DNA of 64,000 nt, taken from the NCBI GenBank assembly GCA_052426225.1, contig JBNJNM010000011.1:1736001-1800000 (forward strand), in the 5' to 3' direction. The DNA is from Zancudomyces culisetae HAW-14-8 (Eukaryota; Fungi; Kickxellomycota). This document shows, one piece after another, positions 13,048-57,900 of the stretch. How positions within the stretch are numbered: the stretch's first letter is position 1; every line of letters starts with the position of its first letter. Under the pieces are notes generated by a model, which worked only from the letters and a program-made list of their open reading frames with translations, was not told the DNA's origin and made no database searches. Position numbers and translations under genes: made by a program.

Positions 13048-13119
13048 GGTCCTATGGTCTAACGGTCATGACATTGGACTTTGAATCCAGTAGCCCGAGT
13101 TCGACTCTCGGTAGGACCT
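13048..13119 (+). tRNA. tRNA-Gln (anticodon TTG), no intron
   Basis: Acceptor stem GGTCCTA/TAGGACC, anticodon arm TTGGA-CTTTGAA-TCCAG, T arm CCGAG-TTCGACT-CTCGG, downstream T-run Pol III terminator. Confidence 0.96.
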
Positions 13120-14755: not shown

Positions 14756-15157
14756 ATGTTTAAACTATCAAAGGTTTTAGCAGTAGCAGCAATCTCTGCC
14801 ATAGCAAATCTCAGTTCAGTTGTAGTAATGGCTGGCGATGCCGATTACAATCAACCAGCACAACCCTATCAACAAAACGACTATGACTCAAATGGTGGCG
14901 ATTCCGGATATGATGCCAATCAAAACTATGATCAGCAAAACGGATACGTCCAGAACGACAATGGGTATGACCAAAACAGCTATCAAAATGGAGGCAAATG
15001 TTACGGCGACAAATACAAATGCATTGGACAAAACAACCCTGGATACCTTCAATGTGACCACGGCACATTCATCTTGAGACAATGTGGCCCTGGAACAGTT
15101 TGTGTTCAAAATGGAAGAGATAGCATTTATTGTGGATACCCACAGAAGTTATACTAA
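14756..15157 (+). CDS. secreted protein with Q/N/Y/D-rich repeats and a C-terminal CBM19-like domain, intronless
   Basis: Signal-like MFKLSKVLAVAAISAIANLSSVVVMA, then YDQN-type repeats, then six Cys including CGPGTVC. First ATG is at 14756 (the ORF track start is a GTG). Confidence 0.85.
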   Translation: MFKLSKVLAVAAISAIANLSSVVVMAGDADYNQPAQPYQQNDYDSNGGDSGYDANQNYDQQNGYVQNDNGYDQNSYQNGGKCYGDKYKCIGQNNPGYLQCDHGTFILRQCGPGTVCVQNGRDSIYCGYPQKLY

Positions 15158-16081
15158 GTAGGGTTTGTAGAGAATAACATCCTGCTTTCTCTTATCGCCT
15201 TATACTGCACATAGTTCAGTGTAAAAAAAGGGAGCGACTTTTTTCTCAAATAAGAGAAGATTATAACTTTCTTAGTTTCATTTGTACTTTCATTTTTCAA
15301 CTTTTGAATATCTAAATAAACTCATTTATTAAATTAAACAGGTGATATGAGCGTTGAATACGAGAAAATAATGCTAGTGGTGACATTTGTGAACTATGTC
15401 CTAAAAACAGTGCAAGAATTGCTTATAGGCTACTATCCAACTTCCTAACCTATGTTACAAAGACTATAACATGTATTTCTTTTGGCATCGTGCTTTTTGG
15501 GGCAGTTTAGTATTTCTATTGGATTTCTTCAAAATAAACAAATGCCTTGACAGTTTGGAAATATAAATTAATGGGTGAGGGGGATGGGAGGAATGAGATG
15601 TGAGGTTATGACAAGATATTTAAGCTCAAAATACACAGCCAATCATAGGTGGTTTTGATGTAAATAAGTTTGTATGAAAAAGCTGAGTTTGATTATGTTT
15701 AGTTTAAAATTGAGGTTTTGTAAAAAGGTAGAAAAAAAAAGAGAAAAATGAGCCAACGAAAAATCAGAAACGTTAGGTAAATAGAACGCATCCAAAAATA
15801 GAGCAATCTATCTTGCAGGATATTTAGAGGGAAAAGCCAAAAAAGATTCCAAGCAACTATTTTAACTTTACCATTCCTAATCAAAGGTGAAAAGCAGAGA
15901 AAATTGAAGCGTACAACCAAAACAAAATAAACACAGTTAGGGTCATAGTATTAAGAGTAGCAGTGTTGTCAACTACGAATGCAAGATCAACGAGATTGAA
16001 AGGATTCTAAAGAAGTATTCAAGTATTGCAGCAAATTTGTAAAGTAGAATTTAAACAGGAAGCAATAAGGGAGAACTGAAA

Positions 16082-19000
16082 ATGGTGGACGATAGAGTGA
16101 AAACTTTGGCAAATCAGATTCGTAAGCAGTTGTTTGTGGGAGTAGAGGATGACCCAAACACGCAAAATTTGTTTAAAGCAGGTAAGAATCGATAGGAGGG
16201 GAGGGTGATTAGCATTATACTCATATTCATGTAGATACGACAAAAATAATATGAACCTGAGTGTAGTGTCACTAATTTAAGAAGAAAAATAGATTGATTA
16301 GCTGTGTTTCTATTGTAAATAAGGTATACCAAGATATCAAGATACCAATAGCTAATAAAAATGTTGAAATAAACAAATAGTTGGATCGACAGCAAAGAGA
16401 GAGAGACTGTTGAATTTGGTCGAGGTCATAGCAAACGAGGATGAGGACGATATAAGTGACAAGAGAACAAAGATATTATGCATTACAGGTAAGAATCGAA
16501 CTGGCGAGAAATCTGTTTTTTTCCTCTTTCTTCATTCTGAAAAAAGGGGGTCCAATTTATACGTATTTGAGTAAAATATACCGTTTCTTTGTTAATAGTT
16601 AAGAGAAATAGAAAGTTGAGACTGCATCGTGTTAAGCATGTTGGGCAGGTGCTAATATCGAGCAAGCAATGGGGCTTAGATGAGATCAAATCGATAGAGT
16701 ACAAGGCGGTAAGTATTCACTATACAAGCCACAACTATGATGGCGGTATTTAGCGGATAGGGGATGATAAAAGAGGAATCAATTTTAAAAAAGTCGATTG
16801 ATAAAATAGGAAAGAAAGTTTAGTATTGGATTGAACAATCTCCATGAATACAGAACTACTGATGCACTACAGACGGAGGCATTTATACAGATGCTAGTCA
16901 CGGTAAATACTTGATTAATGATAGGGATTATTTGTGTAGAAAAGGCAGCTTGTGCGTTTATGTGCGTGGAATATGTTTAATAATAATATTTGGGATTCAA
17001 TATATATGAAATGTAGCTGTGTAATAAATACTCACAAAAACCACCGAAATATGTAAACATGGTCGGGGAGTTGAATAAAGGTAGGAATGAGAGAATATAA
17101 AAAATATGAATAGAATTAGATTGGTGTTGGTTATTTTAAGAAACAGAGAATAACATTTGCTATAAATAAACATTACAGGTAAAAAAGCTCCATCGAAACC
17201 AACAGAAAAAGGAAAAAGAGAAGAATCAGGAAAAAAACTAGTCAGAAAGCCAGATGCCGGAACTAAGACCAAAGAGCAGCCAAAGAGTGCAGTGAAACCA
17301 AAAGAAAGAACCACAACAACCCAAGTAGAGGAGAAGGGGAAGCGCGAGAAAGAGAGGCGAACCACGGAGACGGCTAGTGAGTCGAAGCGGGAAGAGGAGA
17401 GAAGAGAAAGAAGTGCAGAGGTGTCTGAACAGATTGGCGAGGGAGAGCAGGATGAGTATATAGATTTTGATTATGAGATAGAAGAGGGACAAGAAAACCA
17501 GCAAACGGCGGAAGATTTGCTATTGGACGAAACGTTTATGCTAAGTGCAGATGAGCTGTTGGGGGATTTTGGATGGCGCGCAAATATAGATGCAGCGGAG
17601 CTTGAATCAAGACTTATATCAGAGCTTTCGCGGCTTGATTCGGAAAACGTGCGGGCAGTTCTGGAGGCAGATAAGCGGGTACCGGTGGTGATTACAGAGT
17701 TGGACAAGGCGATTAATGAGCTGGAAGTGATGGATCAGCTACTAGAAAGGTATTTGTATGGGCTGGACTCTATGGGAGAAGATGTTCGAAAGATCCAGAT
17801 AGAGAACGAAAATCTAAAGATCGAGGAGCTTAACCAGCAAAAGCTGCTAATGGAGCTGGAAGGTATATTACGACTAATAGCAATGCCAGAGGAGCAGTTG
17901 CAGATTTTGCGAAAGGAATCATTGGACACACAGCAAGGGATAGATCGGGTCCAGCAAGTGGCGGCAATGTTGCAGCAAAAACTATCGACGGGTCTGGAGG
18001 GCCGGCTAGAGGAGATGGAGGCAGCGCGCGAGAAGAAGAAGAAATATGAGTTTTACTGTTCTAACTTCTCGACGCGGGTTTACGACTATCTCAAAGTGAT
18101 TATTCAGTTTAAAACGGAGGAAGCGCTTTCTAAGAAGCCGAAATCAACAGGTCGAAGACTCAAAGATATTGTTGCGCCAGCATATGTGCATGATAATCTG
18201 GTTCGATATACCGGATTCAATTTGTGGCTGCGCGAATTCAAGCCAGCTTCGGACAAAGAACTTCAGGCTCTGTATATCCAGACAATGAATAAGCTGTACT
18301 CTATTGAGGGAAATGATCTGATCGATTCGTGCCGCTTTTACTTTTTCAAATTGCGCAACAATACGATCGAATACCTATTTAGTCAACCAGCATCTGTTAC
18401 CACAAGCACACAGGCCGTGTCGTTCGGTACAAGAAGACCATCAGCAGACAAGCAAGATAGTGGGATGGGTGGAAACGTATTGATGGGTGGCGGGCGGCGG
18501 TCGGACAGTATTAGTGTGGACATGCAACCATACCAAGCGTTTTCTGCAGCCAGTAGAACGTTGATCACCAACGTAGTGGTCGAACAAAACTTTTTGGCAG
18601 ACTTTTTCCACTATGCACCGGCAAAGCCCAGCACAGGATCCAAAAAGGGCCGCAAAGTTGATGCGTACGATCCCAGCACGACGTCGGCCAGAATCACGTT
18701 CAACGAATGGGTGACAGGTGGCTGGGAGTCGATAGGCATGTGGTCAGTTCCACGTAAATACAAAGTACAAAGCAATATCAACACTGAAGTCAAAAACATT
18801 CTAGAGCTTTTGTTTGGCAATCTTAAAGCACACCTCGACAGCATGATCGATATGGGTACACGTTTTGATCCATCGCAGGCGTTGGGAATGATTGCTGCAG
18901 TGGAAGAATTGGAGGATATGTGTAAAGGTACTGACCAATTGTTTGCCATCCGTCTGCTCGAGGCGGCTAAAAAACGTCTGACTACTATTTTCGATCAGTT

Positions 19001-19796
19001 TGTACAAGCTCAGATGGCTGCCATTGACGATAAAAAACTTGTTACAAAGAAGCGATCTGGTGTGCAGCCAGCGGTTAGAATTTTTCCCAAGTTTCTTTCT
19101 CATATGGAGTCTTTATCTGGGCTCAATTCGCCTGAAGCCCAGGAACTTTCCAACCAAACCATTAGCAAAGTCGGTCAGCATATTCTGGACACCTTTGTTA
19201 ATCTTGTAACCGAATCCAAAACTGCGGCTCAGGGTAATGACAAGGATTTGTTGAAAGAATACCTCAATTCTCTAATTCTTGCCCTGACTAACCTTTCTAC
19301 TTTACGAGATGGTCTTGCGCCTCTCGTTTCCTCGTCAAAATCTGAGCGTTTGGGCACCTTCAATGTAGCCAAACACTTTTACAATATATCTTCCAGACAC
19401 GCTGCGACTTTCCAGCATGATTATGTGATGATTTTGATTCATCGACCTATGGGTCGTCTAATCGACTTTTTCTCTGTCGTTGATGATGCCTATTCTCGCC
19501 AACAATCTCCCGAGTTGATTCCTGGCCATAACCGTGCATCTTTGAAGAAACTAGTTGCTGCACACACCCAAAAAGAAGTCAAAGAGGCTGTCAAACTTCT
19601 GTACAAGCGTGCCGAAAAGCATCTTGGTAGCCAACCAGCGCTACTCAGTGCGGTGTGGCGGGAGGTCAGAGAAGATATGCTCAAACTCCACCAGAGTTTT
19701 ACTGCCACACTAACAAAGTTCTATACCGACTCTGGGATTACATTGGAGTTTAGACAGGCTGATTTATTACAGTGGCTTGATGAACAGTCTCGATAA
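16082..19796 (+). CDS. SEC3: exocyst subunit Sec3; exons 16082-16181, 16381-16488, 16599-16708, 16810-16902, 17017-17080, 17179-19796
   Basis: Five phase-consistent introns give an N-terminal PH-like domain (KILCITVKRN...KQWGLDEIKSIE...LCNKYSQKPP). The main ORF has the Sec3 coiled coil (LESRLISELSRLDSENV) and Sec3_C motifs (EQNFLADFFH, KKRSGV, LYKRAEKH). Confidence 0.88.
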
Positions 19797-20919
19797 TTTT
19801 ATTCGTTTATCTGTCTTGTGTACTTTCTCTATTTATTTCCTCGCCTACCTTCTATATATAAACACATATTTATAATTTATTCTTTTTCTTTTTCTTTTTC
19901 TTTTTGAGTATTCTGATTAAAATTTGTTTATAACAGAATCTATGGTTATATATATATATATATATACTACTTTACTTTGTATAGTGTTGTTTTTGTGTTT
20001 TCTGAGCTATTCTTAACACGTGTGGTTTTAGTCTCTGGTCTAGGTATTATTCTATAACCTGGATGGTATTATATTTGCAGATACAGTTAAGTTAGCCCAA
20101 TAAACGAGGTGATATAACGCATTGGCTGCTTGACACAAGTTTTATGTATTATATTTGAGGTTTTATATTTATCTAAAATTTTTAATATTCTTTATTTAAT
20201 GACATTAATAAGCTAATGTATTTGAAAAAAAGGAAATGAATATCAAAAAGTTTGCCTATGAATGAGGGGGAAGTGTCATACCTCCTGTAATATCGATTGT
20301 TAGGCGTTTGTATTTGAAGTTTAAAAATGTATTTTTATTATAGTGGTTTATGTATAAACTGCTTATTGAATCGTTTATCTGATGAAATGCTTCTATATTT
20401 TACAATAGAGTAAACTTGCGTGAATGAGTGAATGTGTGTAGTGGGGTGGGGAGAGAGAGGACCATTTCGATGAGTTCTCTCTTTCCACTTTTCCATGTTT
20501 GTAATTTACTGGACTGGAATCACAGGCATCACTATTGGCCGGGAATAAACTTACATAACAGAGAGCAGAGATTATTAAAGAAAAAATTTTTTCCCAATAG
20601 AATTCCAACCATTTGGTAAAAAAACAAAAAAAAAACGAAAAGAATACGAGGAAAAGTGGAAAAGTGGTAAAAATGGAGCAAAAGAATAAAAGAACAAGAA
20701 AAAAAAATAGTAAATGGGAGGAGGGTTTGTTTGATATAATAAGCTAGGAAAAACATTTTCTTTCTTCTTTGTTTTATATTCTAAACAAAAAGTAAATATA
20801 AACCAAACTTGTAAATACTAAATAAGATTTTACCCAAGATTGTTATAAATCATATTATAATAATCCAACACAAGGGCATATTATACATATTATCCATAGA
20901 CTTTTATTAAAATATATAA

Positions 20920-23671
<2,752 letters not shown>

Positions 23672-25009
23672 GGAAGGAATGTTATTAAATTAAAATAGGT
23701 CACTTTGTTTGGATAATTTGAGGTGGTCGTATCATTTATTGTTTTATAAATCATTTATTATTGTTTGCTAATAAAGGAACAATTCATATTCATCAAACAC
23801 AGAAAAAAAAAGAAAAAAAGACGAGTAAAATTTTCGCGATTTTGGCAAAAATAAAAAAAAATAAAAATAAAAAAATAACAGCAATCTACTGTTATTTATT
23901 TGACTTGTTCGTTTTATTTTGCAAAAAAATTTTCTTTTGGAGTTTAACTAGTGTTATAAAGGAGAAGAAAAAAAAACTAGTAAACTAGATGGTAAAATAA
24001 AAAATAGAGTAAAATAAAGCAAAACGGAATGAAATAAAAAATCAATGTAACGTACTTGAGGATTTTGTTGTTTTAAATTCAAATAATATTTGAAAAGAAA
24101 AGGAGAAATTAATTTTTATTATTTTAGAATACCTAAATAATAAAGCAAGGATAGTAGTAATAACAAGAGGAACTTTTAGAATACAAACATTATTTAAGGT
24201 AATTAAAGAGAGGATATTATACATTAACAATTTCAGACTTTTTAAATGTAAAAAAAATACAGCACTTGAAACAAAAAACAAACGTTTAAATAATAATAAT
24301 AATGTAATACCCAAATCAATTTCAATTCTTTAATGACTATTTCACTTGTAAATTGAAAGCTTTTATAAATATAAATTATAAATGTATTTTAGAAATATAG
24401 AAACTCTTTCCCCCCCCATTCTCTTTTTTATTATTATTTACCAGTACAAGGGATTCAAATAGATAAAAATAAGAATAAGAAAAGGAGCGGATGGAAAGGC
24501 CAATGCTGTAGAGTAACATTATTATAATTAACATTGACGAATAAGAAAATAAAGACAAAAACGAAAAAAGAAAAAGGAAAAACGAAGGGGAAAGGAAAGG
24601 AAAGGAAAGGGAAATTGTATCCAAATAGTTGTATGGAAGAACCCATTTGAATCGAGAAAACAAAAAACAAAAAACCTAGTATTTTTTATTAATTTTCTTA
24701 AAAGGTAAAAACATATATAATTGTCATTATTGATACCATTAATGATTGGAATTGGGTTTTGATCAAGAATAATGAATTGATGAATTTAAATATGGAAATG
24801 AAAATGAAAATGAAAATGGAAATAGGTACGGAGTAACCCACACAAACTTTTTACAAAAGATTTTATTTTTTAATGAAAAGAGAACAAGACGAGGAATAAT
24901 AAGGGAATACAAAAGTATAATTTAAGCAGGGATAAAGCAATCAATTGCAGAATCAAAATAGAAAAAAGTTGGGAAAAGAATTGTTTTGTAATTGTAGTTG
25001 GTTTCCAGA

Positions 25010-28000
25010 ATGCAAGTAGATGAAGCAACAATAGATAGAACAACAAAGCAAACGGAGGAGGCAGTGCGTATGAATAATGTTGGTGGAGGTAGAATGATGG
25101 AGGAAGGTGGTAGTGATGTGTTTGAAGAGTTGGATGGTGAAGAAGAAATATATAGAAAAACAGGGGGAACACCAACCGTAAGAGGGTCTGATAGTGATAT
25201 TAACAGCACTGAAGGTGAAGGTAGTCCAGTAGTCCATAAAACAAACAGGACGCAACAAGGTTTTTATAGTCATAATAACAACAATAACAATAAGAATAAT
25301 AATAATGTATTTGATTCAGCTTCAGACTCGGAGCTTGATTTGGACTTGGATATGGAAGGATATTCATCATCAAGTGCAAGTGAGAAAGAAAAACAAGATG
25401 ATGAATATATGGAATCAGACGCATTTAGTGAAGAAGAAGAGGAGGAAGAACAAGATAGTGATGATACTAGTGATGAAGAATGGGGTAAAAAAGCAACTAG
25501 TAAAAAGAAGAGAAGTGTGAAAAAGACAAAAAAGACAGGGAATAGAAATATGGTAGCAGATAGAAATAGAGGAGCAAAAGCGACAAAAAAAAGGCGGGTG
25601 GACAGCGATAGTGATAGTGAGGATTCTGAATATACAGAGGGGAGAGGTTCAAGGCGAACAAACAAGAAAAAAAACAAAAAGAGACGGTATGAAGAGTATA
25701 GTGGAGGCGGGACAAATTCAAATTCAAACTCAGAATCAGATTTTGAATACCGAGGCAAAAGAGGGAGTGGGTATGGAAGAAAGGCCAGAGCGACAACAGC
25801 AACGGTGCAGAGTTATAATGAGCAAAACGAGAGTAGTGCGGGCAGTAGTTTTGATGAAGAGATGGACGAGCGAGGAGGAGCGGGGTATGGCGAGCGTAAA
25901 CGGGCAAAGAGTAGCAAGCCAACAATGGTAGAGCCGACGATTGACGAGCCAGGAGAAGAGGATATAATTGAGACGATTAAAGATCACCGGCTGATTAATC
26001 AGGAGAAGCAGCAACTGGAGCCGGGAGAGGAAGTAGAGACAGGGGCAGAGGAGGAGACGTCGATGGAAGATATTAATGCGCTGGAGTTTTATGTCAAGTG
26101 GAAAGGATGGTCGTATCGACACAGTACGTGGGATACATATGCGAATTTGCGAGAGTACAAGGGGTACAAGAAGGTGGAAAATTATTTTAAATCGGTAGTG
26201 CTTGCGGAAGTGGCGGTGTTGGAAGACCCCGAGACATCGCAGGAGGTGATTGAACAAACCAACATTAACAAGGAGATTAACCGGCAGATTATGGCGGAGT
26301 TTAAGGAGGCAGAGCGGATTGTTGCAGAGAGAGAGTCGCGGGATCCGGCAGATCCAGAGGGGGCGATTGAGTACTTGGTGAAGTGGAAAAGGCAGCCATA
26401 TGGAGCATGTACGTGGGAAGCAGGAGAGGATATGCGGAATGAGTTTGCGGAGGTGGTGGATCGATACGTAGATCGCAGCAATTCGGATAAAGTAGCGTAT
26501 CGAAGCAGCAAATATGGACGCAAGCGACCAACGTATCAAAGAATACCGACACAGCCCAAATATCTAACGGGAGGCGAGCTGCGAGATTACCAGTTGACGA
26601 GTTTGAACTGGATGGCGCATTTGTGGAGTCGGAATGAGAATGGGATTTTGGCAGACGAAATGGGATTAGGAAAGACTGTGCAGACAATATCGTTTTTGGC
26701 GTATTTGTTTTATAGCATGCAAGTGTATGGGCCGTATCTGGTGATAGTTCCATTATCGACAATTGGGTCGTGGCAGCGTGAGTTTGCCAAGTGGGCTCCT
26801 GATATGAATGTAATTAGTTATACTGACGATGGTCGTAGTCGCGCCATTGCTCGAGAGTATGAGTTTTGGGAGGATGGGAATCGAGACAAAATCAAATTCA
26901 ATGCGTTGTTGACGACATATGAGTTGGTTTTAAAGGACCGCGATGTTTTGAAGGATATCAAATGGGCTTTTATGGCTATAGACGAAGCCCATCGATTGAA
27001 AAACAGCGATTCGCAACTACACGAGGCGCTGCGGTCATTCAAAGTGGCCAACATGTTGTTGGTTACGGGTACGCCGCTACAAAACTCAGTTAAGGAGTTG
27101 GTAACGCTGTGTCGATTTTTGATGCCAGACAAGTTTGACGATTTGGATATTGATTTGGATATCAAGATGGCCAACGATCCCGAACAAACAAAGACTATTG
27201 GTGAGCTGCATCGACGGCTTAAACCGTATATGTTACGAAGACTGAAAAAGGATGTTGAAAAGTCTTTGCCTCTGAAAACAGAACGGATTTTGCGTGTGGA
27301 GCTGGCTGCAATGCAGGTTCATTACTACAAGAACATTTTGACACGCAACTATGCTGTGCTAAACAAAGGAGTCAGTGGTGCAGGCCAGTTATCTCTGCTC
27401 AATGTTATGGTAGAGTTGAAAAAGGCTAGCAATCATCCGTTCCTGTTTCCCAATGCCGAGGTTATTAGTGCCAACGATTCAATAGCCGACCAGTTACGCG
27501 GAATTGTGTTGAACAGTGGCAAAATGATGTTGTTGGACAAACTGTTAACTAGACTACGACAGGGAGGCCATCGAGTGTTGGTATTTAGCCAGATGGTTCG
27601 CATGCTTGATATTATTTCCGATTATCTGTCGTATAAATCGTTGCCGTTCCAAAGACTGGATGGTTCAGTATCCAGTGAACAGCGCAAAAAGAGTATTGAA
27701 CATTTCAACATGCCCAACTCGGTTGATTTTTGTTTTTTGTTGTCTACTCGCGCTGGTGGTTTGGGTATCAATTTGGAGACTGCCGATACTGTTATTATCT
27801 TTGATTCTGATTGGAATCCTCAAAACGATCTTCAAGCAATGGCTCGTGCTCATCGGATTGGTCAGAAAAAGCAAGTGTCTGTATACCGGTTTGTTAGTAA
27901 AGGAACTATTGAAGAGGAGATTTTGGATCGAGCCAAACGCAAAATGGTACTTGAATATTGTATTATTAAGGGTATGGATACTAGTGGTTTGAATCTTAGT

Positions 28001-30703
28001 AATTCTACATCTACATCCACATCCAATAATAATAATAACAATAATAATACTCGTTCTTTTGCAAATTCTTCTTCTTCTTCCATTACAAATGCTAACAATC
28101 CTTTTACCAAGGATGAAATGGCCGAAATTCTAAAGTTTGGAGCCAAAAACATGTTTCAACAATCTTCCGATACCGAAAAACCCAAGTCATTGGAAGAGTT
28201 TGATTTGGATTCGGTTCTTGAAGCTGCTGAGCAAACCGAGACCCTGACAAACGGGATGGCTGAAGAGTTTTTGTCGCAGTTTAAAGTTGCTGATGTTGAT
28301 GGATTATCTCTAGAGTATGAGCAATTAAAGTCTGAATCTTGGAATGATATTATTCCCGAACAAGAACGGTTGAAACTTGCTAATGAACAAATGGAACGTG
28401 ATTTGAATTTGGTTCCTTCCGAATCCAAACGACGGAAAAAGAAACGAATTATTTATAGCGAATCCTTTGGTACTGGTAGTACTTCAAAAGCCAACACTAA
28501 CAGTAACAACAATAACAACAATAACAATGATGATGATTATTCTTCATCCTCATCTCTTGATAATTCAAATACTCGTAAACGTCAACCTAGTATAAAGACA
28601 AATGATCCAAATGTCTTAACCGATAAAGAATTCCGAGCACTGGTCAAGTCGATTCTGCGATTTGGTCGTGGCGAGTCGCCTTTATTGTTATCCAAACTCA
28701 TTGCTGATTCCGATTTGTCACACAAGACTGGCTTGTTGATTAAAGATACTATCTCTGAACTAATCAATGTATGTAAAGAAGCCATTTCCAAGACTTCTCA
28801 TAACGACGCAGCCGAAACCCCCGAGTCTTCTTTGAACAAGTCTGTGCTTCTGACTTATCGCAATTCACAAATCAATGCATCTTTGATTCTTCAACGCATT
28901 TCTGATTTCCATAACCTCCACCTGCTATTATCTTCTCTTGATCCTATCCACAAATTCCGTATTCCTCTATCAACTTTTTCCAACACCAACACCAACACAA
29001 ACACCAATACCAATACTAACACAAACACCAACAGCAGTATCAAAAACAAAACCAGTTCCAGATCGTTACAACCTTCCAGACTGAAATTGAAACTGAAATT
29101 GAAACCCGTCAAAAACTGGGCTGTTAACTGGGGAATCAAAGAAGATAGTATGCTTTTGGTTGGTATTTATACCTACGGCTTTGGTAATTGGGAGGATATT
29201 AGTCGTGATCATGATTTGGCTTTACAATCTAAATTTTATCTTTCATCTTCATCCTCTGCTCTTGCCAACCCTGGGAGTGCTCCACGGCCTGCCCATCTAT
29301 CTCGAAGAGCTGATTATCTATTCAAATTCATTTCCTCCATTACTCACCCTTCAAAGCTTTTATTCCCAAATCTCAATTCCTCTTTTAACGGTCTTGACAA
29401 TTCCAACTATCAAAACTCCACTGCTTCTCCTCTACATCATCATTCTTTGGATTACTCATCATCAAATCTCAACAATACTAATACCTTCACTTCTTCTTCA
29501 GCGTTTGATCATCATGGTCGCCGTGATTCATCGTTCTCTAACGCTGCAATGGATGAAGGTGGTAGTGGTCATACAGCGCATACTTCAACTGGTGCTAATT
29601 CTTCCCATACTGCTGCATCGGGCTCCAACGACCCATCTTCTCACCATGAAGAAGGTCAAGTTAGCGAATATGAATCAATGGATGAGCTTGAGTGTAAGGA
29701 TCTTTTGACTCCTGTACACCATTTCTTGAGGCGATTAAAAGATGGCAGCGACAAAGTTGATACCAAGGACAAGAAGATCCGTTTGATTTCCCAGTGTCTA
29801 TTGCCTATTGGTCGACATATCCGTTCCGTTATTGAACGACGCCTGGGGAGATGTAGGAAGTCTGACAAGGCTCAAATCAAAGCTGTCCATGATCTGAATA
29901 AACATTTGTGGGTTTATGTGACTTATCATTGGAGTCGACCAATTAGCCATAAACAAATGTTGAATTTGTTTGAAAAACTTGAGCTTAAAAAAGTCAATAC
30001 TTCTACTACTTCTACTACTTCTATCACTACTAATACTACTACTACCTCCATTTCTACTCCTACTTCCATTTCTACCCCTATCCCTACCCCTACCCTTAAC
30101 CCTACCCTTAACCCTACCCTTAACCTTACTTCTACTCTGCCTTTGTCTATGTCTAATCCTTCTGCTTCCATTTCTACTCCATCCTCTTCTATTGCCAACT
30201 CTAATATTAACTCCTCCCTTGCACTTAACTCAAGTTCCAACTCAAATACAGCCTCAAATCTTAATAGTGGTACAAATCTCAACTCTAATTCCAATCCTAA
30301 TCCCAATACTAATCTTGGTAGTGGTGGTAGTGGTGGTGGTAGTGGTAATACTGGTTCTAGTACAAATTTCACTAATACCAATAATAACCAGCAAAAACAT
30401 TTACATCCTCAACGTCATCCTCACTCTCACTCTCACTCTCACTCCCATTCCCATCCACATCCACATCCCCACTCTCACTCTCACTCTCATCCACACTCTC
30501 AATCTTACTCTCAATCTCACTCCCACCATCATTCGTACCAACATCATCTAAACAATCCAAATACTCAACGACATGGAGGTTATTCTTACCAACATTCGCA
30601 CTCTAACAACAACAACAGCAGCAACAACAACAGCAACAGCAATAGCAATAAAAATTATCAAAATAAGTACTCGTCACCTTCTACAAACCGACGCTTTTAT
30701 TAA
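25010..30703 (+). CDS. CHD1: chromodomain helicase DNA-binding protein Chd1/Hrp3
   Basis: Tandem chromodomains (FYVKWKGWSYRHSTW, EYLVKW), Snf2 ATPase (GILADEMGLGKT, DEAHRLKN, QAMARAHRIGQ), SANT/SLIDE (WGIKEDSMLLVGIYTYGFGNW) and a CHCT-like C-terminal helical domain. Start at first ATG; an upstream exon is not excluded. Confidence 0.95.
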   Translation: MQVDEATIDRTTKQTEEAVRMNNVGGGRMMEEGGSDVFEELDGEEEIYRKTGGTPTVRGSDSDINSTEGEGSPVVHKTNRTQQGFYSHNNNNNNKNNNNVFDSASDSELDLDLDMEGYSSSSASEKEKQDDEYMESDAFSEEEEEEEQDSDDTSDEEWGKKATSKKKRSVKKTKKTGNRNMVADRNRGAKATKKRRVDSDSDSEDSEYTEGRGSRRTNKKKNKKRRYEEYSGGGTNSNSNSESDFEYRGKRGSGYGRKARATTATVQSYNEQNESSAGSSFDEEMDERGGAGYGERKRAKSSKPTMVEPTIDEPGEEDIIETIKDHRLINQEKQQLEPGEEVETGAEEETSMEDINALEFYVKWKGWSYRHSTWDTYANLREYKGYKKVENYFKSVVLAEVAVLEDPETSQEVIEQTNINKEINRQIMAEFKEAERIVAERESRDPADPEGAIEYLVKWKRQPYGACTWEAGEDMRNEFAEVVDRYVDRSNSDKVAYRSSKYGRKRPTYQRIPTQPKYLTGGELRDYQLTSLNWMAHLWSRNENGILADEMGLGKTVQTISFLAYLFYSMQVYGPYLVIVPLSTIGSWQREFAKWAPDMNVISYTDDGRSRAIAREYEFWEDGNRDKIKFNALLTTYELVLKDRDVLKDIKWAFMAIDEAHRLKNSDSQLHEALRSFKVANMLLVTGTPLQNSVKELVTLCRFLMPDKFDDLDIDLDIKMANDPEQTKTIGELHRRLKPYMLRRLKKDVEKSLPLKTERILRVELAAMQVHYYKNILTRNYAVLNKGVSGAGQLSLLNVMVELKKASNHPFLFPNAEVISANDSIADQLRGIVLNSGKMMLLDKLLTRLRQGGHRVLVFSQMVRMLDIISDYLSYKSLPFQRLDGSVSSEQRKKSIEHFNMPNSVDFCFLLSTRAGGLGINLETADTVIIFDSDWNPQNDLQAMARAHRIGQKKQVSVYRFVSKGTIEEEILDRAKRKMVLEYCIIKGMDTSGLNLSNSTSTSTSNNNNNNNNTRSFANSSSSSITNANNPFTKDEMAEILKFGAKNMFQQSSDTEKPKSLEEFDLDSVLEAAEQTETLTNGMAEEFLSQFKVADVDGLSLEYEQLKSESWNDIIPEQERLKLANEQMERDLNLVPSESKRRKKKRIIYSESFGTGSTSKANTNSNNNNNNNNDDDYSSSSSLDNSNTRKRQPSIKTNDPNVLTDKEFRALVKSILRFGRGESPLLLSKLIADSDLSHKTGLLIKDTISELINVCKEAISKTSHNDAAETPESSLNKSVLLTYRNSQINASLILQRISDFHNLHLLLSSLDPIHKFRIPLSTFSNTNTNTNTNTNTNTNTNSSIKNKTSSRSLQPSRLKLKLKLKPVKNWAVNWGIKEDSMLLVGIYTYGFGNWEDISRDHDLALQSKFYLSSSSSALANPGSAPRPAHLSRRADYLFKFISSITHPSKLLFPNLNSSFNGLDNSNYQNSTASPLHHHSLDYSSSNLNNTNTFTSSSAFDHHGRRDSSFSNAAMDEGGSGHTAHTSTGANSSHTAASGSNDPSSHHEEGQVSEYESMDELECKDLLTPVHHFLRRLKDGSDKVDTKDKKIRLISQCLLPIGRHIRSVIERRLGRCRKSDKAQIKAVHDLNKHLWVYVTYHWSRPISHKQMLNLFEKLELKKVNTSTTSTTSITTNTTTTSISTPTSISTPIPTPTLNPTLNPTLNLTSTLPLSMSNPSASISTPSSSIANSNINSSLALNSSSNSNTASNLNSGTNLNSNSNPNPNTNLGSGGSGGGSGNTGSSTNFTNTNNNQQKHLHPQRHPHSHSHSHSHSHPHPHPHSHSHSHPHSQSYSQSHSHHHSYQHHLNNPNTQRHGGYSYQHSHSNNNNSSNNNSNSNSNKNYQNKYSSPSTNRRFY

Positions 30704-30722
30704 AAATATAACAATACAAAAA

Positions 30723-30866
30723 ATTTCTATTTCTATTTCTATTTCTATTTCTATTTATAATGTGATTGTTACTATACTTTATACTTTGATTTATATTTTG
30801 TTCATATTTAAATTTCAAATCTTTGACCTGACACACACACACACACACTCTCTCTCTCTCTCTCTA
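30723..30866. repeat. microsatellites (ATTTCT)n, (CA)n and (CT)n
   Basis: Directly visible downstream of the CHD1 stop. Confidence 0.85.
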
Positions 30867-31091
30867 TCTTTTTTCTTGTTTTAGTTTACACGTGTTTTTA
30901 TTAAATTGTAAAAGAAACTACTAGTGGAAAATAAAGAAATAAAAAAAAAGTATACTTGTATACTAAACTATTATATCGTAACCTACTAAATCCTCTTCCT
31001 CTTCCCCCTCCCACATCCCACATCCACACAGACGTGGATATAAGTGTATTATTTTTATTTTTATTTTTATTTTTATGTCCCCCTTTCATAC

Positions 31092-31736
31092 TTACTCATT
31101 CTTGCTCTTTGCAGTACCATCACTACCTGTTTGCTTGAATTCCTTGATCTTTTGGATAATTTCATTATTCATCTCTTCACAAAACTCCTTTCTGTACCCC
31201 AAGGTAAACAAAATTTCGAGGAACACAAAGAAAGGTGCCATAGCAAAGGCTTGTAGCAAGTTATCAAACAATGCTGGCGCACGCTTCTCAAATGTAAAGT
31301 GGCCAATGAACTGGACGGCCCAGGAGACAAAAAACACAATCGTTGTGTAGTACATTGCGGTGCTGGGTTCACTAGCATAGTACGCAACGAATTTGAAAGA
31401 AGCACCCAAAATACTCGAGAATATCGGAAGAAATAGCAGTGCAGCGATGGGATCGAGTATAAAGTAATACAGCATATACACAAAACCGTAAATATCAACA
31501 TGGCGTAGCCCGCTGGCAGTAATTCCAAGGCTTGTGCTAAGTGCCGCTTTTACTGATTCGGGGTATTCAAATGCGAGCGAACCGCCCGTATACAGCGTAA
31601 TGTAGTTAGAGAATGTCCACAGAATAGTTGGTACAAAGATTATGTGGATAATAACGTTGGTTAGGTTGTAGTGATACTCGCCATATTTGACAAATTGAGT
31701 TCGCAAGTCAAAGATTTTGGATATTTGCATTGACAT
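31092..31736 (-). CDS. MPO1: Mpo1/YGL010W-like (DUF962) membrane protein, 2-hydroxy fatty acid dioxygenase family
   Basis: YGEYH..TNVIIHIIFVP and WAVQFIGHFTFEKRAPALFDNLLQAFAMAPFFVFLE family motifs. Confidence 0.9.
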   Translation of the reverse strand: MSMQISKIFDLRTQFVKYGEYHYNLTNVIIHIIFVPTILWTFSNYITLYTGGSLAFEYPESVKAALSTSLGITASGLRHVDIYGFVYMLYYFILDPIAALLFLPIFSSILGASFKFVAYYASEPSTAMYYTTIVFFVSWAVQFIGHFTFEKRAPALFDNLLQAFAMAPFFVFLEILFTLGYRKEFCEEMNNEIIQKIKEFKQTGSDGTAKSKNE

Positions 31737-31765
31737 TTTTTCTTTCCTTTCCTTTTCTTTCCTCT

Positions 31766-31821
31766 TGTTTTGTTTTGTTTTGTTTTGTTTTGTTTTGTTT
31801 TGTTTTGTTTTGTTTTGTTTT
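31766..31821. repeat. (GTTTT)n pentamer microsatellite upstream of MPO1
   Basis: About 11 contiguous GTTTT units. Confidence 0.9.
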
Positions 31822-32994
31822 ATAAATTGTATAATTTATAGTTTTCTTTTCTTTATAAATATATATATTTTTCTCTCTCTCTCTCTCCTTAGTACCGGTA
31901 AAAAAAAAAGTAGTGCTATTTATACTGGCCGTTTAAGAAATGTTTTCTTTTCACGAGATTGTTTAATTTTACTTGTACATATATCATTTTTGTGTTTCAG
32001 GATTTTTTTTTTCATTTCTTGCATTTTTTCCATTTTTTCTAACTCTCGCATTTTTTTTTCCTTTTTTTTTTCATGTGATGTGGTTTAATGCAATGTAATG
32101 TAATTTAATGTGATTTGATTTGGTTTGGTTTTAGGTTTTGATTATTCAATTTATTCCGATTATTTTATTTTTTTATCAATGCATTATTTTAATTATATAC
32201 ACTTTTTTTTTTCTTTTTTACACATAAAACACAAATCAACCATAAAAAAAATAAAGTCATCATTTTTCAAATGCAGGTATATAACAACATTTGGTTAAAT
32301 CTTTGATTAACCAGAAAAGCTTACTAATAATAATTCTATATACATATGTTCTATTTTACCTGAATTGTGAAAAGGAGGCAGAGTGGTAATGTAATTAGAC
32401 TTTCTAAGTACGGCGTATTTATTAAATTATACTAATCTTTCCTTCTCCCCTTTCCCTCACCCCTTCCCCTCCTCCTTTTTCCCCCCTTTCCTTTCATTCC
32501 ACAATTTTCAAGAATCCAAATAATAACGGGAAAAAAAGAGAAAAAAAAGACATGTAAGAAGGCTTTTCCAATAAATTACCGGAGAGAGAGGAGAAAGAGT
32601 TAGAGATCTCATATCCTTTACTTTGATTCAAAATTATTCATAATCTGAGGTGAATGTTTTTGGTTTCGGATATGTCGCTAGTTGAACATATCCAAAATAA
32701 ATAAATAAATCTAAAACAAATAATGATGTTATCACATGTATGTTTGTAGCATAAAAGAAATTACTAGCGGAAAATCAAAATTGCTCGTACATTAAACTTA
32801 CCCATTGTGACCTTGCCTATTTACCCCTTTTCCCTTCTCCTCAATAAAAATAAATAATAATCTGAATCTGAATCTGAATATTTCCATAAGCACAAGCACA
32901 AGCACAAGTACAAGTACAAGTACACTCACATGCATACACATACACAGACACTAATGAGTATATGCAAGTATATTGTCTGTGTATTATCATCAAC

Positions 32995-51986: not shown

Positions 51987-54900
51987 ATGGAAAATGAAAC
52001 AGAAAGAGTAGAAAAATTCTCATGGGCAGAATACCTGCAAAACCAGGTGGTTCCAGTAGTTAGGACAAACAAAACCAAGGAACGTATTGCATTTTTCTCA
52101 ACCGATTTGATTTCAAAGCTCGAAGAGCATCCGATCCCAGAAAAAGCGGTAGTAGTGTTGCTTAAAGCCGTGTTTCCAACAACTAGGAAATATGTGGACA
52201 GGAAATCTCGGTTGTCAGTGCTAGGGTTTTTGAAAAAAATAGGCGAGAAGTATCCCGCAGCGATGGTTGAGGGGGTCAAGACGATAGTTGGAGCAGAGGT
52301 CGACAGGCTGTTTCCGGCTTCAGGAGTTACGACAGCGAACATCAAGGGAACTGCAGATGATAGATTCCAGCTACTGAACTGGATCAATGTGGCCATAAAG
52401 ACAGGGCTGCAGCAAGCTAGTAATAATCGAATGGACAAATTTGATTCGACACTTTCCAAATTGGTGGATTGTCAGGCTCGCTTGCTATTTGGATTATGTA
52501 GGGTTGGCGAACCGGTTGCACCTGGAGCCAAAAGTGGTGGTTCAAGTACAATTGTTGCGGGTGGCCAAGAAGGCGACGGTGCTCGAGAGGGGGGTGTTGA
52601 AGGGAGAAAAACAGACATAATGCATCAGAGCGGATTGGCAGATGTTCGAAGAGTAATACGGAGTAATCCACAGGCTATTCCAGCGTTTTTGGAAGAGTTG
52701 GCAAGTGGAAGGGGGAAGAGCGAGATGTATGGATCCGTTTTACTTGGCAATGTTGTTAGCACGGCAAATAGGCTTCGAAACAGTAACGACGGGAAGGAGG
52801 CTGTGGAAGCAAAGAAGGATGTGATATTAAAGTACATAGAAACAAACATTGTAAGTGCAAAGGCAGCGGTCCCATACTCGGCAGTTGATGCACTTGGCGA
52901 GTTTATTGGAAGTTATGTCGATGAAGCAGTGTTTAAGAACAAAATGGTTCCAGTGGCAAAGAGGATGATATTGCGGGGGCCAGAAGTGGTATTTATGGTG
53001 CTGAATTTGGTGCTTGAAAGGGTAGAATTTGATGTTGGTCCGGTATTTAAGAGCGAGTTGGCAGATAGTTTGGTACAAACAGTTTTGAAAAGCACCAATG
53101 TAATGGTCAGAAGGAACGGAGTCAAACTGTTTTTAAGAGCACTCAGTAAGAGCCAAAATGCAGAGAGCCTGATGGGGATTACAGAGATAATCCTGAAAGC
53201 GTTGAGTTCAGGAAAAGCAGTGGGAACAGCAGCGGATGCAAGATCTAGCTTTTATGAGATGCTAAGGGGGCTTGCAGCAGTTGGAAATGGAGATGTTTCC
53301 AAAAGAGTAATTGAGCAAGTACTGGTACAACTGGCTAAGGAGAGCATAGAGACATCGGTGGTTGGGTTGATCGAGATTATTGGGGTACACACCGAAGTAG
53401 TGCTGATTTGTGAAGCCAACGGGGCCAAAGATTATATAGAGACAATCAAAAAAGTGGCCGAGGCAGCGGGTAAGGTGGTGAAGCAGCAAGGTAGTAAGAG
53501 CGGGGTGGCGGTGAAGAGAGCATGGATGACCCAGGTGCTTGGTGAGCCAGTGTGGAAGGTGATGGTAGGGCAAGTAAGAAGTCTTGAGGGCACCGAAATG
53601 CTAGGCAAAGAGGCAATTGAAGTATTATCTAAGAATCAAGACGCAGGATTTAACGAGGTTGTTGAAGGGTTTATAGGGTTGGCAATATGGTTAAAACTAA
53701 GCCAGGTTCAAAAACACGATGAGCAGCGGGCACAGGCTATCAAGATAGTAAAAGGAGAGGAGAGGAAAGGCGGAGCAGTTTATTTGTATTCGGATAAAGT
53801 GTTGCATAAGGCGACGGAGGAGAGGGAGGCCATTTGGTTGATGCGAGCACTGGAGGGAATATACATGGAGCCGACGGTATATGAGGGAAATGAGTGGCAG
53901 CGAGAAAAGTTTGTAGAGGCGTTGATGACAGTGATAGAAGCAAGTAAGAGATCGCAGTGTATGGCGAATGAGGTGTGTGCGGCAGTGAATAGGATGGTAA
54001 AGAGTAATGGCGTGGAAATAGGATCTATGATAGAAAAATATGGAGTGCAGCAACTACAAAAGATCAGACAAACACCATTAAGTAGCACAAAAACAAAAGA
54101 AGATGGTGAAGAGGAAGAGCCTCAGCAGAGAGGTAAGAAAACAGAGATAGGTAGAATTTACCAAACCTTTATGGATGGTGATTATGATAAGGAGCAGAAG
54201 GCGCAGATGGCAATGCAGCTAGCACTATTAGTTCACAATGAGGAGAACGGGCAAGAAATATGGATTTCTTTGGTTCAAGAAGCAGGGTTAGATGTGCGAG
54301 AAGTCAGTTTGTTGTATAGTGACAAGTTGTTGGAAAGAGCAGTGGATGCAATTGTAAATGAGCAGGGAGAGCAAGGAGGCAGTAGATTGCTTGAGACACT
54401 GTCATTTGTGCTTGGGGAGGAAGTTATCGAGACGATATTACACAGAGCATCAAAACTGGTTAAGGAATCCAATGTCAAGAGTTTGGGATCTACAGAACAA
54501 AAGATTTGGAACACACCAGAGGGTGAGTTGGCTGCTGATTTAACAGAACTAATGCGCGAAGATTCGAAATCGCAGGGTGGAACAGGGAGTAGCGCAGAAA
54601 GGAAGTGGGAAGCAGAGGTGCGTGCGCAAATAGCACTCAAGAAGCGGGGAACACTAGGGAAGGAGGAGCAAAAGAAGGTAGATGAACAGCTGAAGGAGGA
54701 GAAAAAGATTCGAGAGCAGATTGGATGGCAGGCGAGGAAGGTGGGGGCAGCAATTGAGATGATAGCATCGATTGTACGAGGAAATGTTGACGAGGCAAAG
54801 AACTATGTGACGTTGATGTACAGAATCCTTTTGCAGGAGATAGCTGGAGAACAGGATGGCGCATGGTTGGTTGGGCAGCAGTTGCGAGCAGCAGTAGTTA

Positions 54901-57900
54901 TGATTGTTAAACAACTAGCGGAAGGAGTCAACCAGAAACACATTGTGGCGCTGGCCATGGCAATACTTCGAACCAACAGCAAAGGAAGTTATGAGTGTGT
55001 AGACGAGGAGTGGACCAAGGAACCGATCGAATTTATGGTAACACGGTTGTTGTTTTCATTGCGAATGTCTTCAGAAACTGAGGTGTTTAGCGAGACGGAT
55101 TTCGCAATAGCATTTCCATTGGTTCAAGCAACGATACAGGCAGGAGGGTATGGTGAGCAGCGAATTGAGGGAGCAGATGAGTACACAACAACAAGCCAAC
55201 GCGAGGAACAGATTGCAATGCTGGCAGAGATCATTTTGCTAAATTGGTCACGTCCACATCAGCGTGACAACCGTGAGCTGCGAGTTGAGAGTTTGCAAAG
55301 CTGTTTGGTTATAATGGAGAAGTTCTCCAGCAACAGTTTGGCAAAGGGAATTGAGGCGGTTGAAATGATATGTGCACAGACCGCAAGGATTAGCGAAGAA
55401 ATGCAAAGCAGTGTTGGAGAAGAGCGAAAGGTAGTGCTGCGAGGGTTGTTGAGTAAGGATTCAGCTATCAGAAATGGCTGCTTGGTGGGGCTACGCTATC
55501 TCAACTTTGATGATATTGACACTGGTGATGATATAGATGTTGCAGGAATTGAGCAGATAGCAGCACTATGGATTGCGACATGCGATAACGAACAAGCATC
55601 GTCATTGGCTAATAGCGAGTTGGCGACAACTTTGTTTTACACCGAATTTGAACTCGATTGCTATATTGGACAGTTGATGGAGTATCTGATTAGCAAGCGG
55701 GGATTTTTGATGCACAATGTTGTAAGTGGCGAAGCGGGTAATGAGTGGTACAACAACCGGTACATTCACAAGAGTAGTGTTAAGGCCATAGCAGAGGCAG
55801 TATCATTGCTATGGGATAGCAACGAGCGAGACAAGAACGAGTTGGCTGAATTTGTGTTGGTTGGATTGAAGGAAAGATACAGACAATACTACATATCGCT
55901 GGAGCCAGAGTTAGATCAATACGGACTGGTAATTGCAGGAACATCCAACAAAGTTGATCCATATCCAGTACGTGTAGCTATTGGCGAGACATTGGATTTG
56001 ATAATTCCAGTTATCAGCAACAACGCTAATAGCAATGATGGTGATAAAATGGCAATTACACATGTTATGGACTTTTTGTTAAATGACAAGGCACTAGGAG
56101 ATCGGGACGAGCAGGTTCGCGATGTGATGCTGAAGTTGGGAACAACATTGGTTAAGAGCTATGGTGAAGGATCGCAGTCGAGCGAGATAGGACATCGGTT
56201 GGAGACATGGCTAAACAGCACGGCGAGTGGAGCTGGAAGTGATGAAGTGCACGATGTGATGAAGGAGTCAGTAGTAGTGTTGCTAGGAACACTTGCCAGC
56301 TATTTACCAGAAGACAACGGTGCCAACGATGGACGAGTAAAGAGCGCAATCCAGAATTTGACGGCATGTTTACATACGCCATCCGAGTCTGTGCAAATGG
56401 CAGTGGCCAATTGTTTAGTACCGCTAGTCAAACGCATTAATACCAAAGACGAACAGTTTGTTGGTGAGTTGATCAAGCAGCTGTTGAGCGAATTGACAGT
56501 AGGTAAGAAATATGGAATCCGTAGAGGTGCAGCTTATGGACTTGCTGGAGTAGTTAAGGGTGGTGGGTTGGTAGTGTTGCGCAACCACGATATTGTTAAG
56601 AAGCTGCGTAACTTTGCCAACGACAAAAAGAGCATCAGTACACGACAAGGGGCATTGTTTGGTGTGGAAACATTGTCAATAATGCTTGGAAGGTTGTTTG
56701 AGCCGTATATGATTCAGATTCTCCCAGTGCTACTCAGACTGTTTGGTGACTCGAGTGCGGATGTCCGTGAGGCAACATCTGACGCAGCCAAGGCAATTAT
56801 GGGTCAGTTGAGTGGATACGGTGTCAAGTTGGTGGTTCCATCGCTGCTAAATGGGTTATCGAGCGAAAGTCCATGGAGAACCAAAGTCGGAAGTATTGAA
56901 ATGCTTGGATCGATGGCATTCTGTGCGCCCAAACAACTATCGTCTGCATTACCCGCCATTGTACCTGATTTGGTTGAATCGCTATCTGATACACATATTA
57001 ACGTTTCTCAGGCAGCCAAACAAGCATTGGCGAATTTCGGGCAGGTGATTCAGAACCCTGAGATCATTGATATGGTACCACATTTGCTGCTGGCACTGGA
57101 AGACCCAGCAAACAAGACATCCCCTGCTCTGTCACGACTAATCAATACTGCATTTGTTCATTATGTCGATGCCCCATCGCTGGCCCTGATCGCACCAGTA
57201 TTGGAGCGTGGGCTCAAGGAACGCAAGACTATTGATAAACGACAAGCAGCCCAAGTGTTTGGATCATTGGCTGTCTTGAGTGAACCCAACGATCTTGTGT
57301 TGTACTTGCCTAAAGTTATGCCGTTGCTGATTGATGTACTTGCCGACCCTGTTCCTGAAACACGTGCCACTGTTGCCAAAGCATTGGGCAAACTGGTGTC
57401 CAAGTTGGGTGAGGAACGTTTCCCAACGCTGGTCGATGATTTGCTGGAAACACTGCAGAGCAAAGTATCTGGAATGGATCGTGCTGGTGCTGCCCAAGCG
57501 CTTAGTGAAGTCGTTTACGGTATTGAATTAAGCACAGAGGTCGACGAACAAGTTACAGATGATCGACTGACAGCACTGGTCGATATGACCCTGCAAAAGG
57601 GCTGCACCAGTTCACTGTTTTATGTCCGCGAAGGTTTTATGACTCTGTTGATGTATTTGCCGTCCACCTTTGGTGACCGCTTTGTGGTATATCTAGACCG
57701 TGTTGTCAACCCAGTGCTGCGAGGATTGGCCGATGAATCTGAGCACGTACGTTCGGCGGCTTTGAAGGCTGGTCAAACACTTGTCGCCTTCTACCACAAG
57801 GACGAGGTCGCTCGACAACAACTATTGTCCGAGCTGCTGAATGGTTTGATGAATGACAGCTGGCGAATCCGCAAGGCCAGTGTTGAGTTATTGGGCGATT

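What the first reader, a model, noticed from the sequence alone, without database searches (positions are those of the whole stretch)
15550..32600. Gene-scale saw-tooth purine/pyrimidine skew with jumps at promoters
Seen: on the + strand SEC3, DBP2 and CHD1 each begin strongly G/A-rich (gag/gcg/gtg codons) and drift to C/T-rich (tct/ctt/act) at the 3' end, including at synonymous positions. The strand flips back to purine-rich near 15.6, 20.5, 23.8 and 32.5 kb, each upstream of a gene start. There is no comparable lasting reset at the convergent CHD1/MPO1 junction (~30.9 kb). The CHD1 crossover (~28 kb) lies near the midpoint of the 23.8 and 32.5 kb jumps. Established: transcription-coupled skew keeps one sign along a gene, whereas upward jumps with a decline between them mark bidirectional processes such as replication origins. 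Inference: promoter-centred origins or DSB/resection hotspots a few kb apart leave a very strong mutational footprint. Estimated by eye, not computed.
Basis: partly seen in the sequence, partly recalled or inferred. Interest (0 to 1): 0.8.

Follow-up and report, generated by a model that had tools for sequence, protein, structure and literature searches.

The report
Genes with mirror-image base bias halves
In the mosquito-gut fungus Zancudomyces culisetae, housekeeping genes are purine-rich in their first ~60% and switch abruptly to the mirror-image pyrimidine-rich composition in the rest, a strand-biased mutation footprint about ten times stronger than at yeast replication origins, strong enough to change the proteins, and not yet explained.

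Summary
The window is from Zancudomyces culisetae (Harpellales). The skew is real at fourfold-degenerate sites: (A+G-C-T)/N runs from +0.6 to -0.5 in CHD1 and +0.5 to -0.4 in SEC3 (permutation p=0.0005 each). DBP2 shows no significant trend. Across 264 kb, 18 of 41 long ORFs on both strands show it. Pooled 5' and 3' arms are near-exact reverse complements (A.45 C.11 G.25 T.19 against A.21 C.26 G.11 T.42), so transcription direction does not set the sign. The shape is plateau, sharp flip at about 60% of the unit, plateau; not a saw-tooth. Edges fall at both ends of transcription units and are often one-sided; convergent junctions with gaps of 150 bp or more usually reset. Promoter-centred origins or break hotspots are therefore not supported. 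GCN1 and CHD1 orthologues in relatives are flat. Best reading (0.4): replication forks enter origin-free active genes from both ends. Rev3, Rev1 and Apn1 were not found in the genome, which offers a lead on the chemistry. Closest known: opposite-sign, GC-only gradients along fungal genes (PMC3315797). First readers of this scan noted the same pattern on other DNA of this genome.

The parts
15600..18740 (+). SEC3 purine-rich arm: 5' flank, four short exons and introns (ATG about 16082) and first part of the long last exon; starts with a one-sided rise from about 0 at 15.55 kb
   Evidence: fourfold plateau +0.47
18600..18900 (.). SEC3 purine-to-pyrimidine flip (centre about 18740, logistic scale about 140 bp)
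18740..20100 (+). SEC3 pyrimidine-rich arm (stop 19796) and 3' flank
   Evidence: plateau -0.42; -0.27 at 19.8-20.1 kb
20100..20400 (.). two-sided upward edge in the SEC3-DBP2 tandem gap
   Evidence: -0.21 to +0.15
20947..23671 (+). DBP2 DEAD-box helicase, intron 22640-23114; purine-rich to about 22.4 kb, T-rich then A-rich intron halves, exon 2 near 0; no significant overall trend
23750..27340 (+). CHD1 purine-rich arm: AT-rich upstream region (one-sided rise at about 23.75 kb) and CDS from 25010
   Evidence: plateau +0.60
27300..27700 (.). CHD1 flip, between the SNF2 and Helicase_C domains; no shared motif and no GC peak at flips
27700..30900 (+). CHD1 pyrimidine-rich arm (stop 30703), with Ser/Thr/Pro/His/Asn repeat expansions at the C-terminus
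   Evidence: plateau -0.49
30704..31091 (.). 388-bp convergent CHD1/MPO1 gap with a partial reset
   Evidence: -0.47 to +0.08
31092..31736 (-). MPO1-like gene; small unit with its own weak inversion; the skew ends one-sidedly at about 32.3 kb
51987..61283 (+). GCN1, a 9.3-kb ORF outside the finding with the same pattern: +0.40 to -0.21, flip about 57.1 kb, edges about 51.6 and 61.45 kb

Best explanation
Shown: a strand-asymmetric, transversion-rich substitution bias has shaped housekeeping transcription units, and its direction points inward from both ends, whatever the gene's strand. The strand that runs 5'->3' from an edge into the gene is A>G>T>C. Inferred step 1: the directional process is DNA replication. 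Initiation is kept out of constitutively transcribed DNA and happens in intergenic gaps on either the promoter or the terminator side, so two forks enter each unit and meet near 60% of its length, the head-on fork being slower. Convergent genes with too small a gap act as one unit. Inferred step 2: the leading strand gains purines because non-instructive lesions such as abasic sites are copied by the A-rule in a genome that appears to lack Rev1, Pol zeta and Apn1. My odds: mutational bias independent of transcription direction 0.9; forks entering from both ends 0.4; A-rule chemistry about 0.2.
For: Mirror-image arms: A.45/C.11/G.25/T.19 against A.21/C.26/G.11/T.42 (pooled bins). Both strands: 10 plus and 8 minus ORFs with p<0.01. 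Flip at median 0.62 of the unit, past the middle in 14 of 16; 3' arm length against unit length r=0.95 without POL2. Flat plateaus up to 6.7 kb from the flip. Convergent gaps of 152-388 bp reset by +0.56 to +0.72; gaps of 0-129 bp show no sign change from negative to positive. Direction persists across some promoters: the ES2 5' exon is pyrimidine-rich (-0.52) and the GH17 gene is purine-rich to its 3' end. DNA_pol_B, zf-C4pol and REV3_N searches find pol alpha, delta and epsilon but no Rev3; one HORMA, one weak IMS match, no IMS_C or REV1_C, no Apn1/nfo, no SRAP. The A-rule order and Rev1's dCMP insertion are from my own knowledge.
Against: The flips are sharp (logistic scale 100-600 bp), which needs flanking origins to fire within well under a minute of each other; I know of no fungal precedent. 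The skew drops to about 0 within 200 bp of the 3' end, whereas outward forks should mark intergenic DNA too. POL2 flips at 0.95 of its unit. TAF4 and its small convergent neighbour (gap about 350 bp) do not reset. Yeast origin jumps are about 9%, and a 74% jump at Candida centromeres proved not to be replicative (PMC3459929). Gene absences are weak: the same search missed Rad4's PF03835 domain while finding its BHD_3. Rev1 and Rev3 status in Smittium was not tested. Unit edges were set by eye from the skew and ORFs, without RNA data, so the flip fractions are partly circular.
Confidence: 0.4

Rival explanations
1. Transcription-coupled damage or repair acting from both ends: sense transcription marks the 5' arm, and antisense transcription from the 3' nucleosome-free region, or read-through from a convergent partner, marks the 3' arm.
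For: The skew is confined to transcription units with abrupt edges, about 450 bp before the ATG and 100-150 bp after the stop. It is strongest in conserved constitutive genes and weak in secreted-enzyme and lineage-specific genes. The 3' arm weakens inward, 0.5 to 0.1.
Against: Sense transcription covers the whole gene, so antisense would have to override it fully to give an equal mirror image. The ES2 5' exon is pyrimidine-rich and GH17 has no 3' arm. A sharp flip that scales with gene length is not expected.
Confidence: 0.2
2. The flips themselves are the sources: an origin or break site in mid-gene, acting outward and stopping at the unit's edges.
For: The flip is the sharp, symmetric feature, and left and right amplitudes correlate, r=0.69. 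The polarity (G left, C right) equals the focal intergenic flip in Smittium angustum, where fourfold GC skew goes +1.0 to -1.0 with a GC peak, and the GC-skew direction at yeast origins (PMC3459929).
Against: Flip position scales with unit length. No motif, dinucleotide or GC signal at flips. No decay within long ORFs. AT skew runs opposite to yeast origins.
Confidence: 0.17
3. Meiotic break hotspots at promoters or intergenic gaps, with resection and error-prone fill-in.
For: A Spo11-type domain is present. Edges lie in intergenic gaps. The S. angustum site looks like a hotspot.
Against: One-sided edges, no decay over 5-6.7 kb, flat GC4 of 0.33-0.40. Pol zeta, the usual error-prone fill-in enzyme, was not found.
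Confidence: 0.08
4. Selection on the mRNA (fold-back of purine-rich 5' and pyrimidine-rich 3' halves, elongation ramps) or on protein composition.
For: The skew spans roughly the transcript, and amino-acid use differs: Glu 2.2x, Met 2.5x, His 0.43x, Ser 0.52x, 5' against 3'.
Against: Present at fourfold sites in all eight codon families and in introns. Genes in tight convergent pairs (GWT1, PPT1, RVB1, PDS5) have no 3' arm in their own CDS. Orthologues are flat, and the Z. culisetae protein has drifted from them in the direction of the skew.
Confidence: 0.05
5. Artefact of low-complexity tails, amino-acid composition or assembly.
For: The CHD1 and GCN1 C-termini carry simple repeats.
Against: Signal in conserved domains and within codon families. 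The earlier public GCN1 protein is 100% identical over the region searched.
Confidence: 0.01

Closest known systems
Opposite GC skews at the 5' and 3' ends of fungal genes (McLean and Tirosh 2011, PMC3315797)
   Same: Skew changes sign along genes, reaches fourfold sites and UTRs, alters amino-acid use; cause unresolved.
   Different: There: C-rich 5' and G-rich 3', ramps at the ends with a flat middle, uniform AT skew. Here: opposite sign, GC and AT skew both invert, plateaus with one sharp flip, mirror-image arms, dependence on the neighbouring gene. No Kickxellomycotina among that paper's species.
Replication-associated skews in yeasts and human N-domains (Marsolier-Kergoat 2012, PMC3459929; Polak and Arndt 2009, PMC2817419)
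   Same: Sign independent of gene strand; sign changes at fixed places.
   Different: Yeast origin jump about 9% with leading strand rich in A and C; human domains decline linearly with no sharp termination jump. Here jumps are 0.5-1.7, domains 1.3-10 kb, the sharp feature is mid-gene and the edges are often one-sided.
Intergenic initiation zones flanking origin-free active genes in mammalian fork-direction maps (own knowledge, not checked here)
   Same: Forks enter active genes from both ends and merge inside.
   Different: Scale there is tens to hundreds of kb with broad termination.
Focal G-to-C flip with GC peak in Smittium angustum
   Same: Very strong antisymmetric skew at fourfold sites in a related fungus, G left and C right.
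   Different: Intergenic, decays over about 3 kb, GC4 peaks near 0.8 against 0.2, mostly G/C.

Membership tests
Transcription-coupled skew | One sign along the coding strand | tested here: not met
   Sign inverts with mirror-image composition
Transcription-coupled skew | Confined to the transcription unit | tested here: inconclusive
   Average edges near the ATG and stop, but no RNA data and exceptions at ES2 and GH17
Replication-origin skew (N-domain type) | Sign independent of gene strand | tested here: met
   10 plus and 8 minus ORFs; mirror arms
Replication-origin skew (N-domain type) | Symmetric jump at the origin | tested here: not met
   15.55, 23.75, 32.3 and 51.6 kb edges are one-sided
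Replication-origin skew (N-domain type) | Linear decline between jumps | tested here: not met
   Step model preferred by 217 AIC units
Replication-origin skew (N-domain type) | Jumps coincide with mapped origins or fork direction | not testable with these tools
   No sequencing run was listed
Break or recombination hotspot footprint | Decay with distance from the centre | tested here: not met
   Slopes near 0 over 5-6.7 kb
Break or recombination hotspot footprint | GC peak from biased gene conversion | tested here: not met
   GC4 flat at 0.33-0.40 across flips; edges lie in AT-rich DNA
McLean-Tirosh fungal gene gradient | Sign change along genes, seen at fourfold sites and UTRs | tested here: met
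McLean-Tirosh fungal gene gradient | C-rich 5', G-rich 3', uniform AT skew | tested here: not met
   G/A-rich 5', C/T-rich 3'; AT skew about +0.4 to -0.3

The most novel reading that the evidence does not exclude
Z. culisetae replicates its housekeeping genes as gene-sized replicons: near-synchronous initiation in almost every intergenic gap, with forks meeting at fixed mid-gene points. Loss of Rev1 and Pol zeta inverted and amplified the strand bias until it rewrote codon and amino-acid use by position in the gene.
Probability: 0.2. Interest if true: 0.88.

Novelty: new variant of a known kind. Interest (0 to 1): 0.68.

Why it matters
The cause of within-gene skew inversion in fungi has been open since 2011. 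Here the signal can be read gene by gene in a culturable fungus with a long-read assembly, and each rival mechanism predicts a different result at named coordinates. If forks are the cause, it implies an origin density and synchrony not described in fungi. Whatever the cause, position in the gene biases amino-acid use up to about twofold, which matters for codon-bias, selection and phylogenetic analyses of this lineage.

Tried and rejected
Motif at the flips: best 6-8-mers had p of 2e-4 to 1e-3 among 1,800-5,900 tested, not significant; CpG, ApT and TpA ratios near flat. tRNA genes as anchors: none at flips or edges of the strong domains. Mutator Pol epsilon: exonuclease motifs look intact by eye. 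Loss of nucleotide excision repair: suggested by a blank for PF03835, overturned by BHD_3 and XPA matches. OGG1, UNG, MutS family, ORC2, an xth-type AP endonuclease and an MT-A70 gene are present. End-decay model fits worse than a step. The MPO1 pseudogene is too diverged and short to polarise substitutions. No sequencing run was listed. Rev1 and Rev3 in Smittium were left untested because no query with a reference was at hand. Spliced models were not joined; SEC3 exons were placed piece by piece. A mouse-hotspot paper I wanted for skew polarity was not held, so I make no use of it. Ten paper searches found no report of this pattern in Harpellales; the assembly paper has no occurrence of 'skew'.
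Full report
Identity and data. The window is G000:C11:1736001-1800000 of a 27.1-Mb, 25-contig assembly. Its GCN1 is 100% identical over the searched region to the Zancudomyces culisetae protein, and SEC3's best hits are Smittium at 47%. The size and the 5.2-Mb contig fit the PacBio assembly in PMC12611240, whose text never mentions skew. Gene names in the finding are right by Pfam: SEC3, DBP2, CHD1, MPO1. Positions above 64 kb continue the window's count. No sequencing run was listed. Spliced models were not joined.

The observation. At fourfold-degenerate sites, (A+G-C-T)/N falls from +0.61 to -0.55 in CHD1 and +0.52 to -0.40 in SEC3, p=0.0005 against shuffles within codon families; DBP2 exon 1 has no trend, p=0.19. 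The effect holds in conserved CHD1 domains, in all eight fourfold families and in three of four SEC3 intron stretches. Over 264 kb, 18 of 41 ORFs of 300 or more codons reach p<0.01, ten on the plus and eight on the minus strand. The strongest is TAF4, +0.86 to -0.81. Secreted enzymes and the lineage-specific membrane-protein family are weak or flat.

What kind of bias. Pooled over 17 genes, the 5' arm is about A .45, C .11, G .25, T .19 and the 3' arm A .21, C .26, G .11, T .42, while GC4 stays at 0.33-0.40. The arms are reverse complements on the same coding strand, so the direction of transcription adds little. A purine-pyrimidine imbalance at fourfold sites needs asymmetric transversions; transitions cannot make it. 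The pressure reaches the protein: Glu 2.2x and Met 2.5x, His 0.43x and Ser 0.52x, 5' against 3'. On aligned columns, Z. culisetae GCN1 uses more purine-coded residues than its orthologues in the first four tenths and fewer in the last tenth.

Shape. A plateau-step-plateau model beats a linear decline by 217 AIC units and an end-decay model by 164; the best common logistic scale is 100-200 bp, up to 400-600 bp in the longest genes. Plateaus are flat up to 5-6.7 kb from the flip. The pyrimidine arm ends 100-200 bp past the stop and the purine arm starts about 450 bp before the ATG, with no opposite skew beyond on average. The flip lies at a median 0.62 of the unit, and 3' arm length tracks unit length, r=0.95 without POL2; unit edges were set by eye, so this is partly circular. 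Left and right amplitudes correlate, r=0.69. No motif or dinucleotide signal marks the flips.

Neighbours. Convergent junctions with gaps of 152, 212, 289 and 388 bp (the last is CHD1/MPO1) reset by +0.56 to +0.72. Those with gaps of 0, 10, 76 and 129 bp show no negative-to-positive change, and the pair behaves as one unit. Exceptions: POL2 stays purine-rich for 95% of its unit; TAF4 and a small convergent gene about 350 bp away do not reset; the divergent promoter before ES2 has no jump, and ES2's 5' exon is pyrimidine-rich. So edges belong to both ends of active units, not to promoters as such, and not every gap is an edge.

Relatives. GCN1 in four Smittium species, Mycoemilia, Coemansia, Martensiomyces and Lobosporangium is mostly flat and negative, about 0 to -0.6, with no purine-rich 5' arm; so is S. 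culicis CHD1. The pattern is thus not general in the orthologues tested. S. angustum has something related but different: at the SEC3-cyclin gap, fourfold GC skew goes from +1.0 to -1.0 with GC4 near 0.8 against 0.2, decaying over about 3 kb. That is one or two sites in 43 kb, a lead only.

Mechanism. The geometry is what two machines give when they enter a unit from both ends and meet a little past the middle. Replication forks, with initiation kept out of transcribed DNA and the head-on fork slower, are the known process of that form (0.4). Against it: the sharp flips need near-synchronous firing, and intergenic DNA shows little skew. A paper on yeast skews puts origin jumps at 9% and shows that a 74% jump at Candida centromeres is not replicative (PMC3459929). 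For the chemistry, the inward-running strand has the order A>G>T>C, the A-rule order opposite abasic sites (own knowledge). Family searches found pol alpha, delta and epsilon but no Rev3 in three domains, one HORMA, one weak Y-family match and no REV1_C, and no Apn1 or SRAP. These blanks are weak, since the same tool missed one Rad4 domain, and Smittium was not tested (0.2). Rivals: sense and antisense transcription-coupled repair 0.2, mid-gene sources 0.17, break hotspots 0.08, selection 0.05, artefact 0.01; about 0.1 is left for an unknown cause.

Comparison and verdict. The closest report is the within-gene GC-skew inversion of many fungi (PMC3315797): opposite sign, GC only, ramps at the ends. 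This case fails membership of that pattern, of N-domain skew and of hotspot footprints on tested features, though it works most like a fork-direction skew. I found no paper describing it. Many first readers of this scan noted it elsewhere in this genome; those are unchecked notes, not support. New variant of a known kind, mechanism open; interest 0.68.

Noticed in passing
window 32980-33610 (-): Frameshifted tandem pseudogene copy of MPO1, just outside the skewed domain.
   Followed up: partly
L022 ~11500-16800 (Smittium angustum): Focal antisymmetric site at the SEC3/cyclin gap: fourfold GC skew +1.0 to -1.0, GC4 peak near 0.8 against 0.2; a weaker one at L023 ~6700; L031's last ORF (S. simulii) also has GC4 0.73. 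Looks like a recombination-hotspot or origin footprint.
   Followed up: partly
whole genome: No match for Rev3, Rev1 C-terminal domain, Apn1/nfo or SRAP/HMCES; only one HORMA and one weak Y-family match. Possible loss of Pol zeta and Rev1.
   Followed up: partly
G000:C13:582779-583447: Separate copy of the Pol delta C-terminal part, with the same zf-C4pol score as the main gene.
   Followed up: no
G000:C24: Five repeated copies of a family-B polymerase and four of a helicase, about 26 kb apart in both orientations; probably a virus-like or linear element.
   Followed up: no
window 22640-23114: DBP2 intron is T-rich in its first half and A-rich in its second (AT skew -0.39, +0.27).
   Followed up: partly
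window 37255-38361, 45197-46384, 47401-48372, 62631-63611: Four paralogous multi-pass membrane proteins; the two scanned have no Pfam match; low GC and weak skew.
   Followed up: no
L001:6886 to L002:~5200 (-) and L006:6592 to L007:866 (+): The Pol epsilon and Pol alpha catalytic genes lie 7-60 kb right of the window; POL2 is the outlier, purine-rich over 95% of its unit.
   Followed up: partly
L016-L017 (151-166 kb past the window's end): About 15 kb of AT-rich (22-30% GC), gene-poor DNA with tRNA genes and no skew.
   Followed up: no
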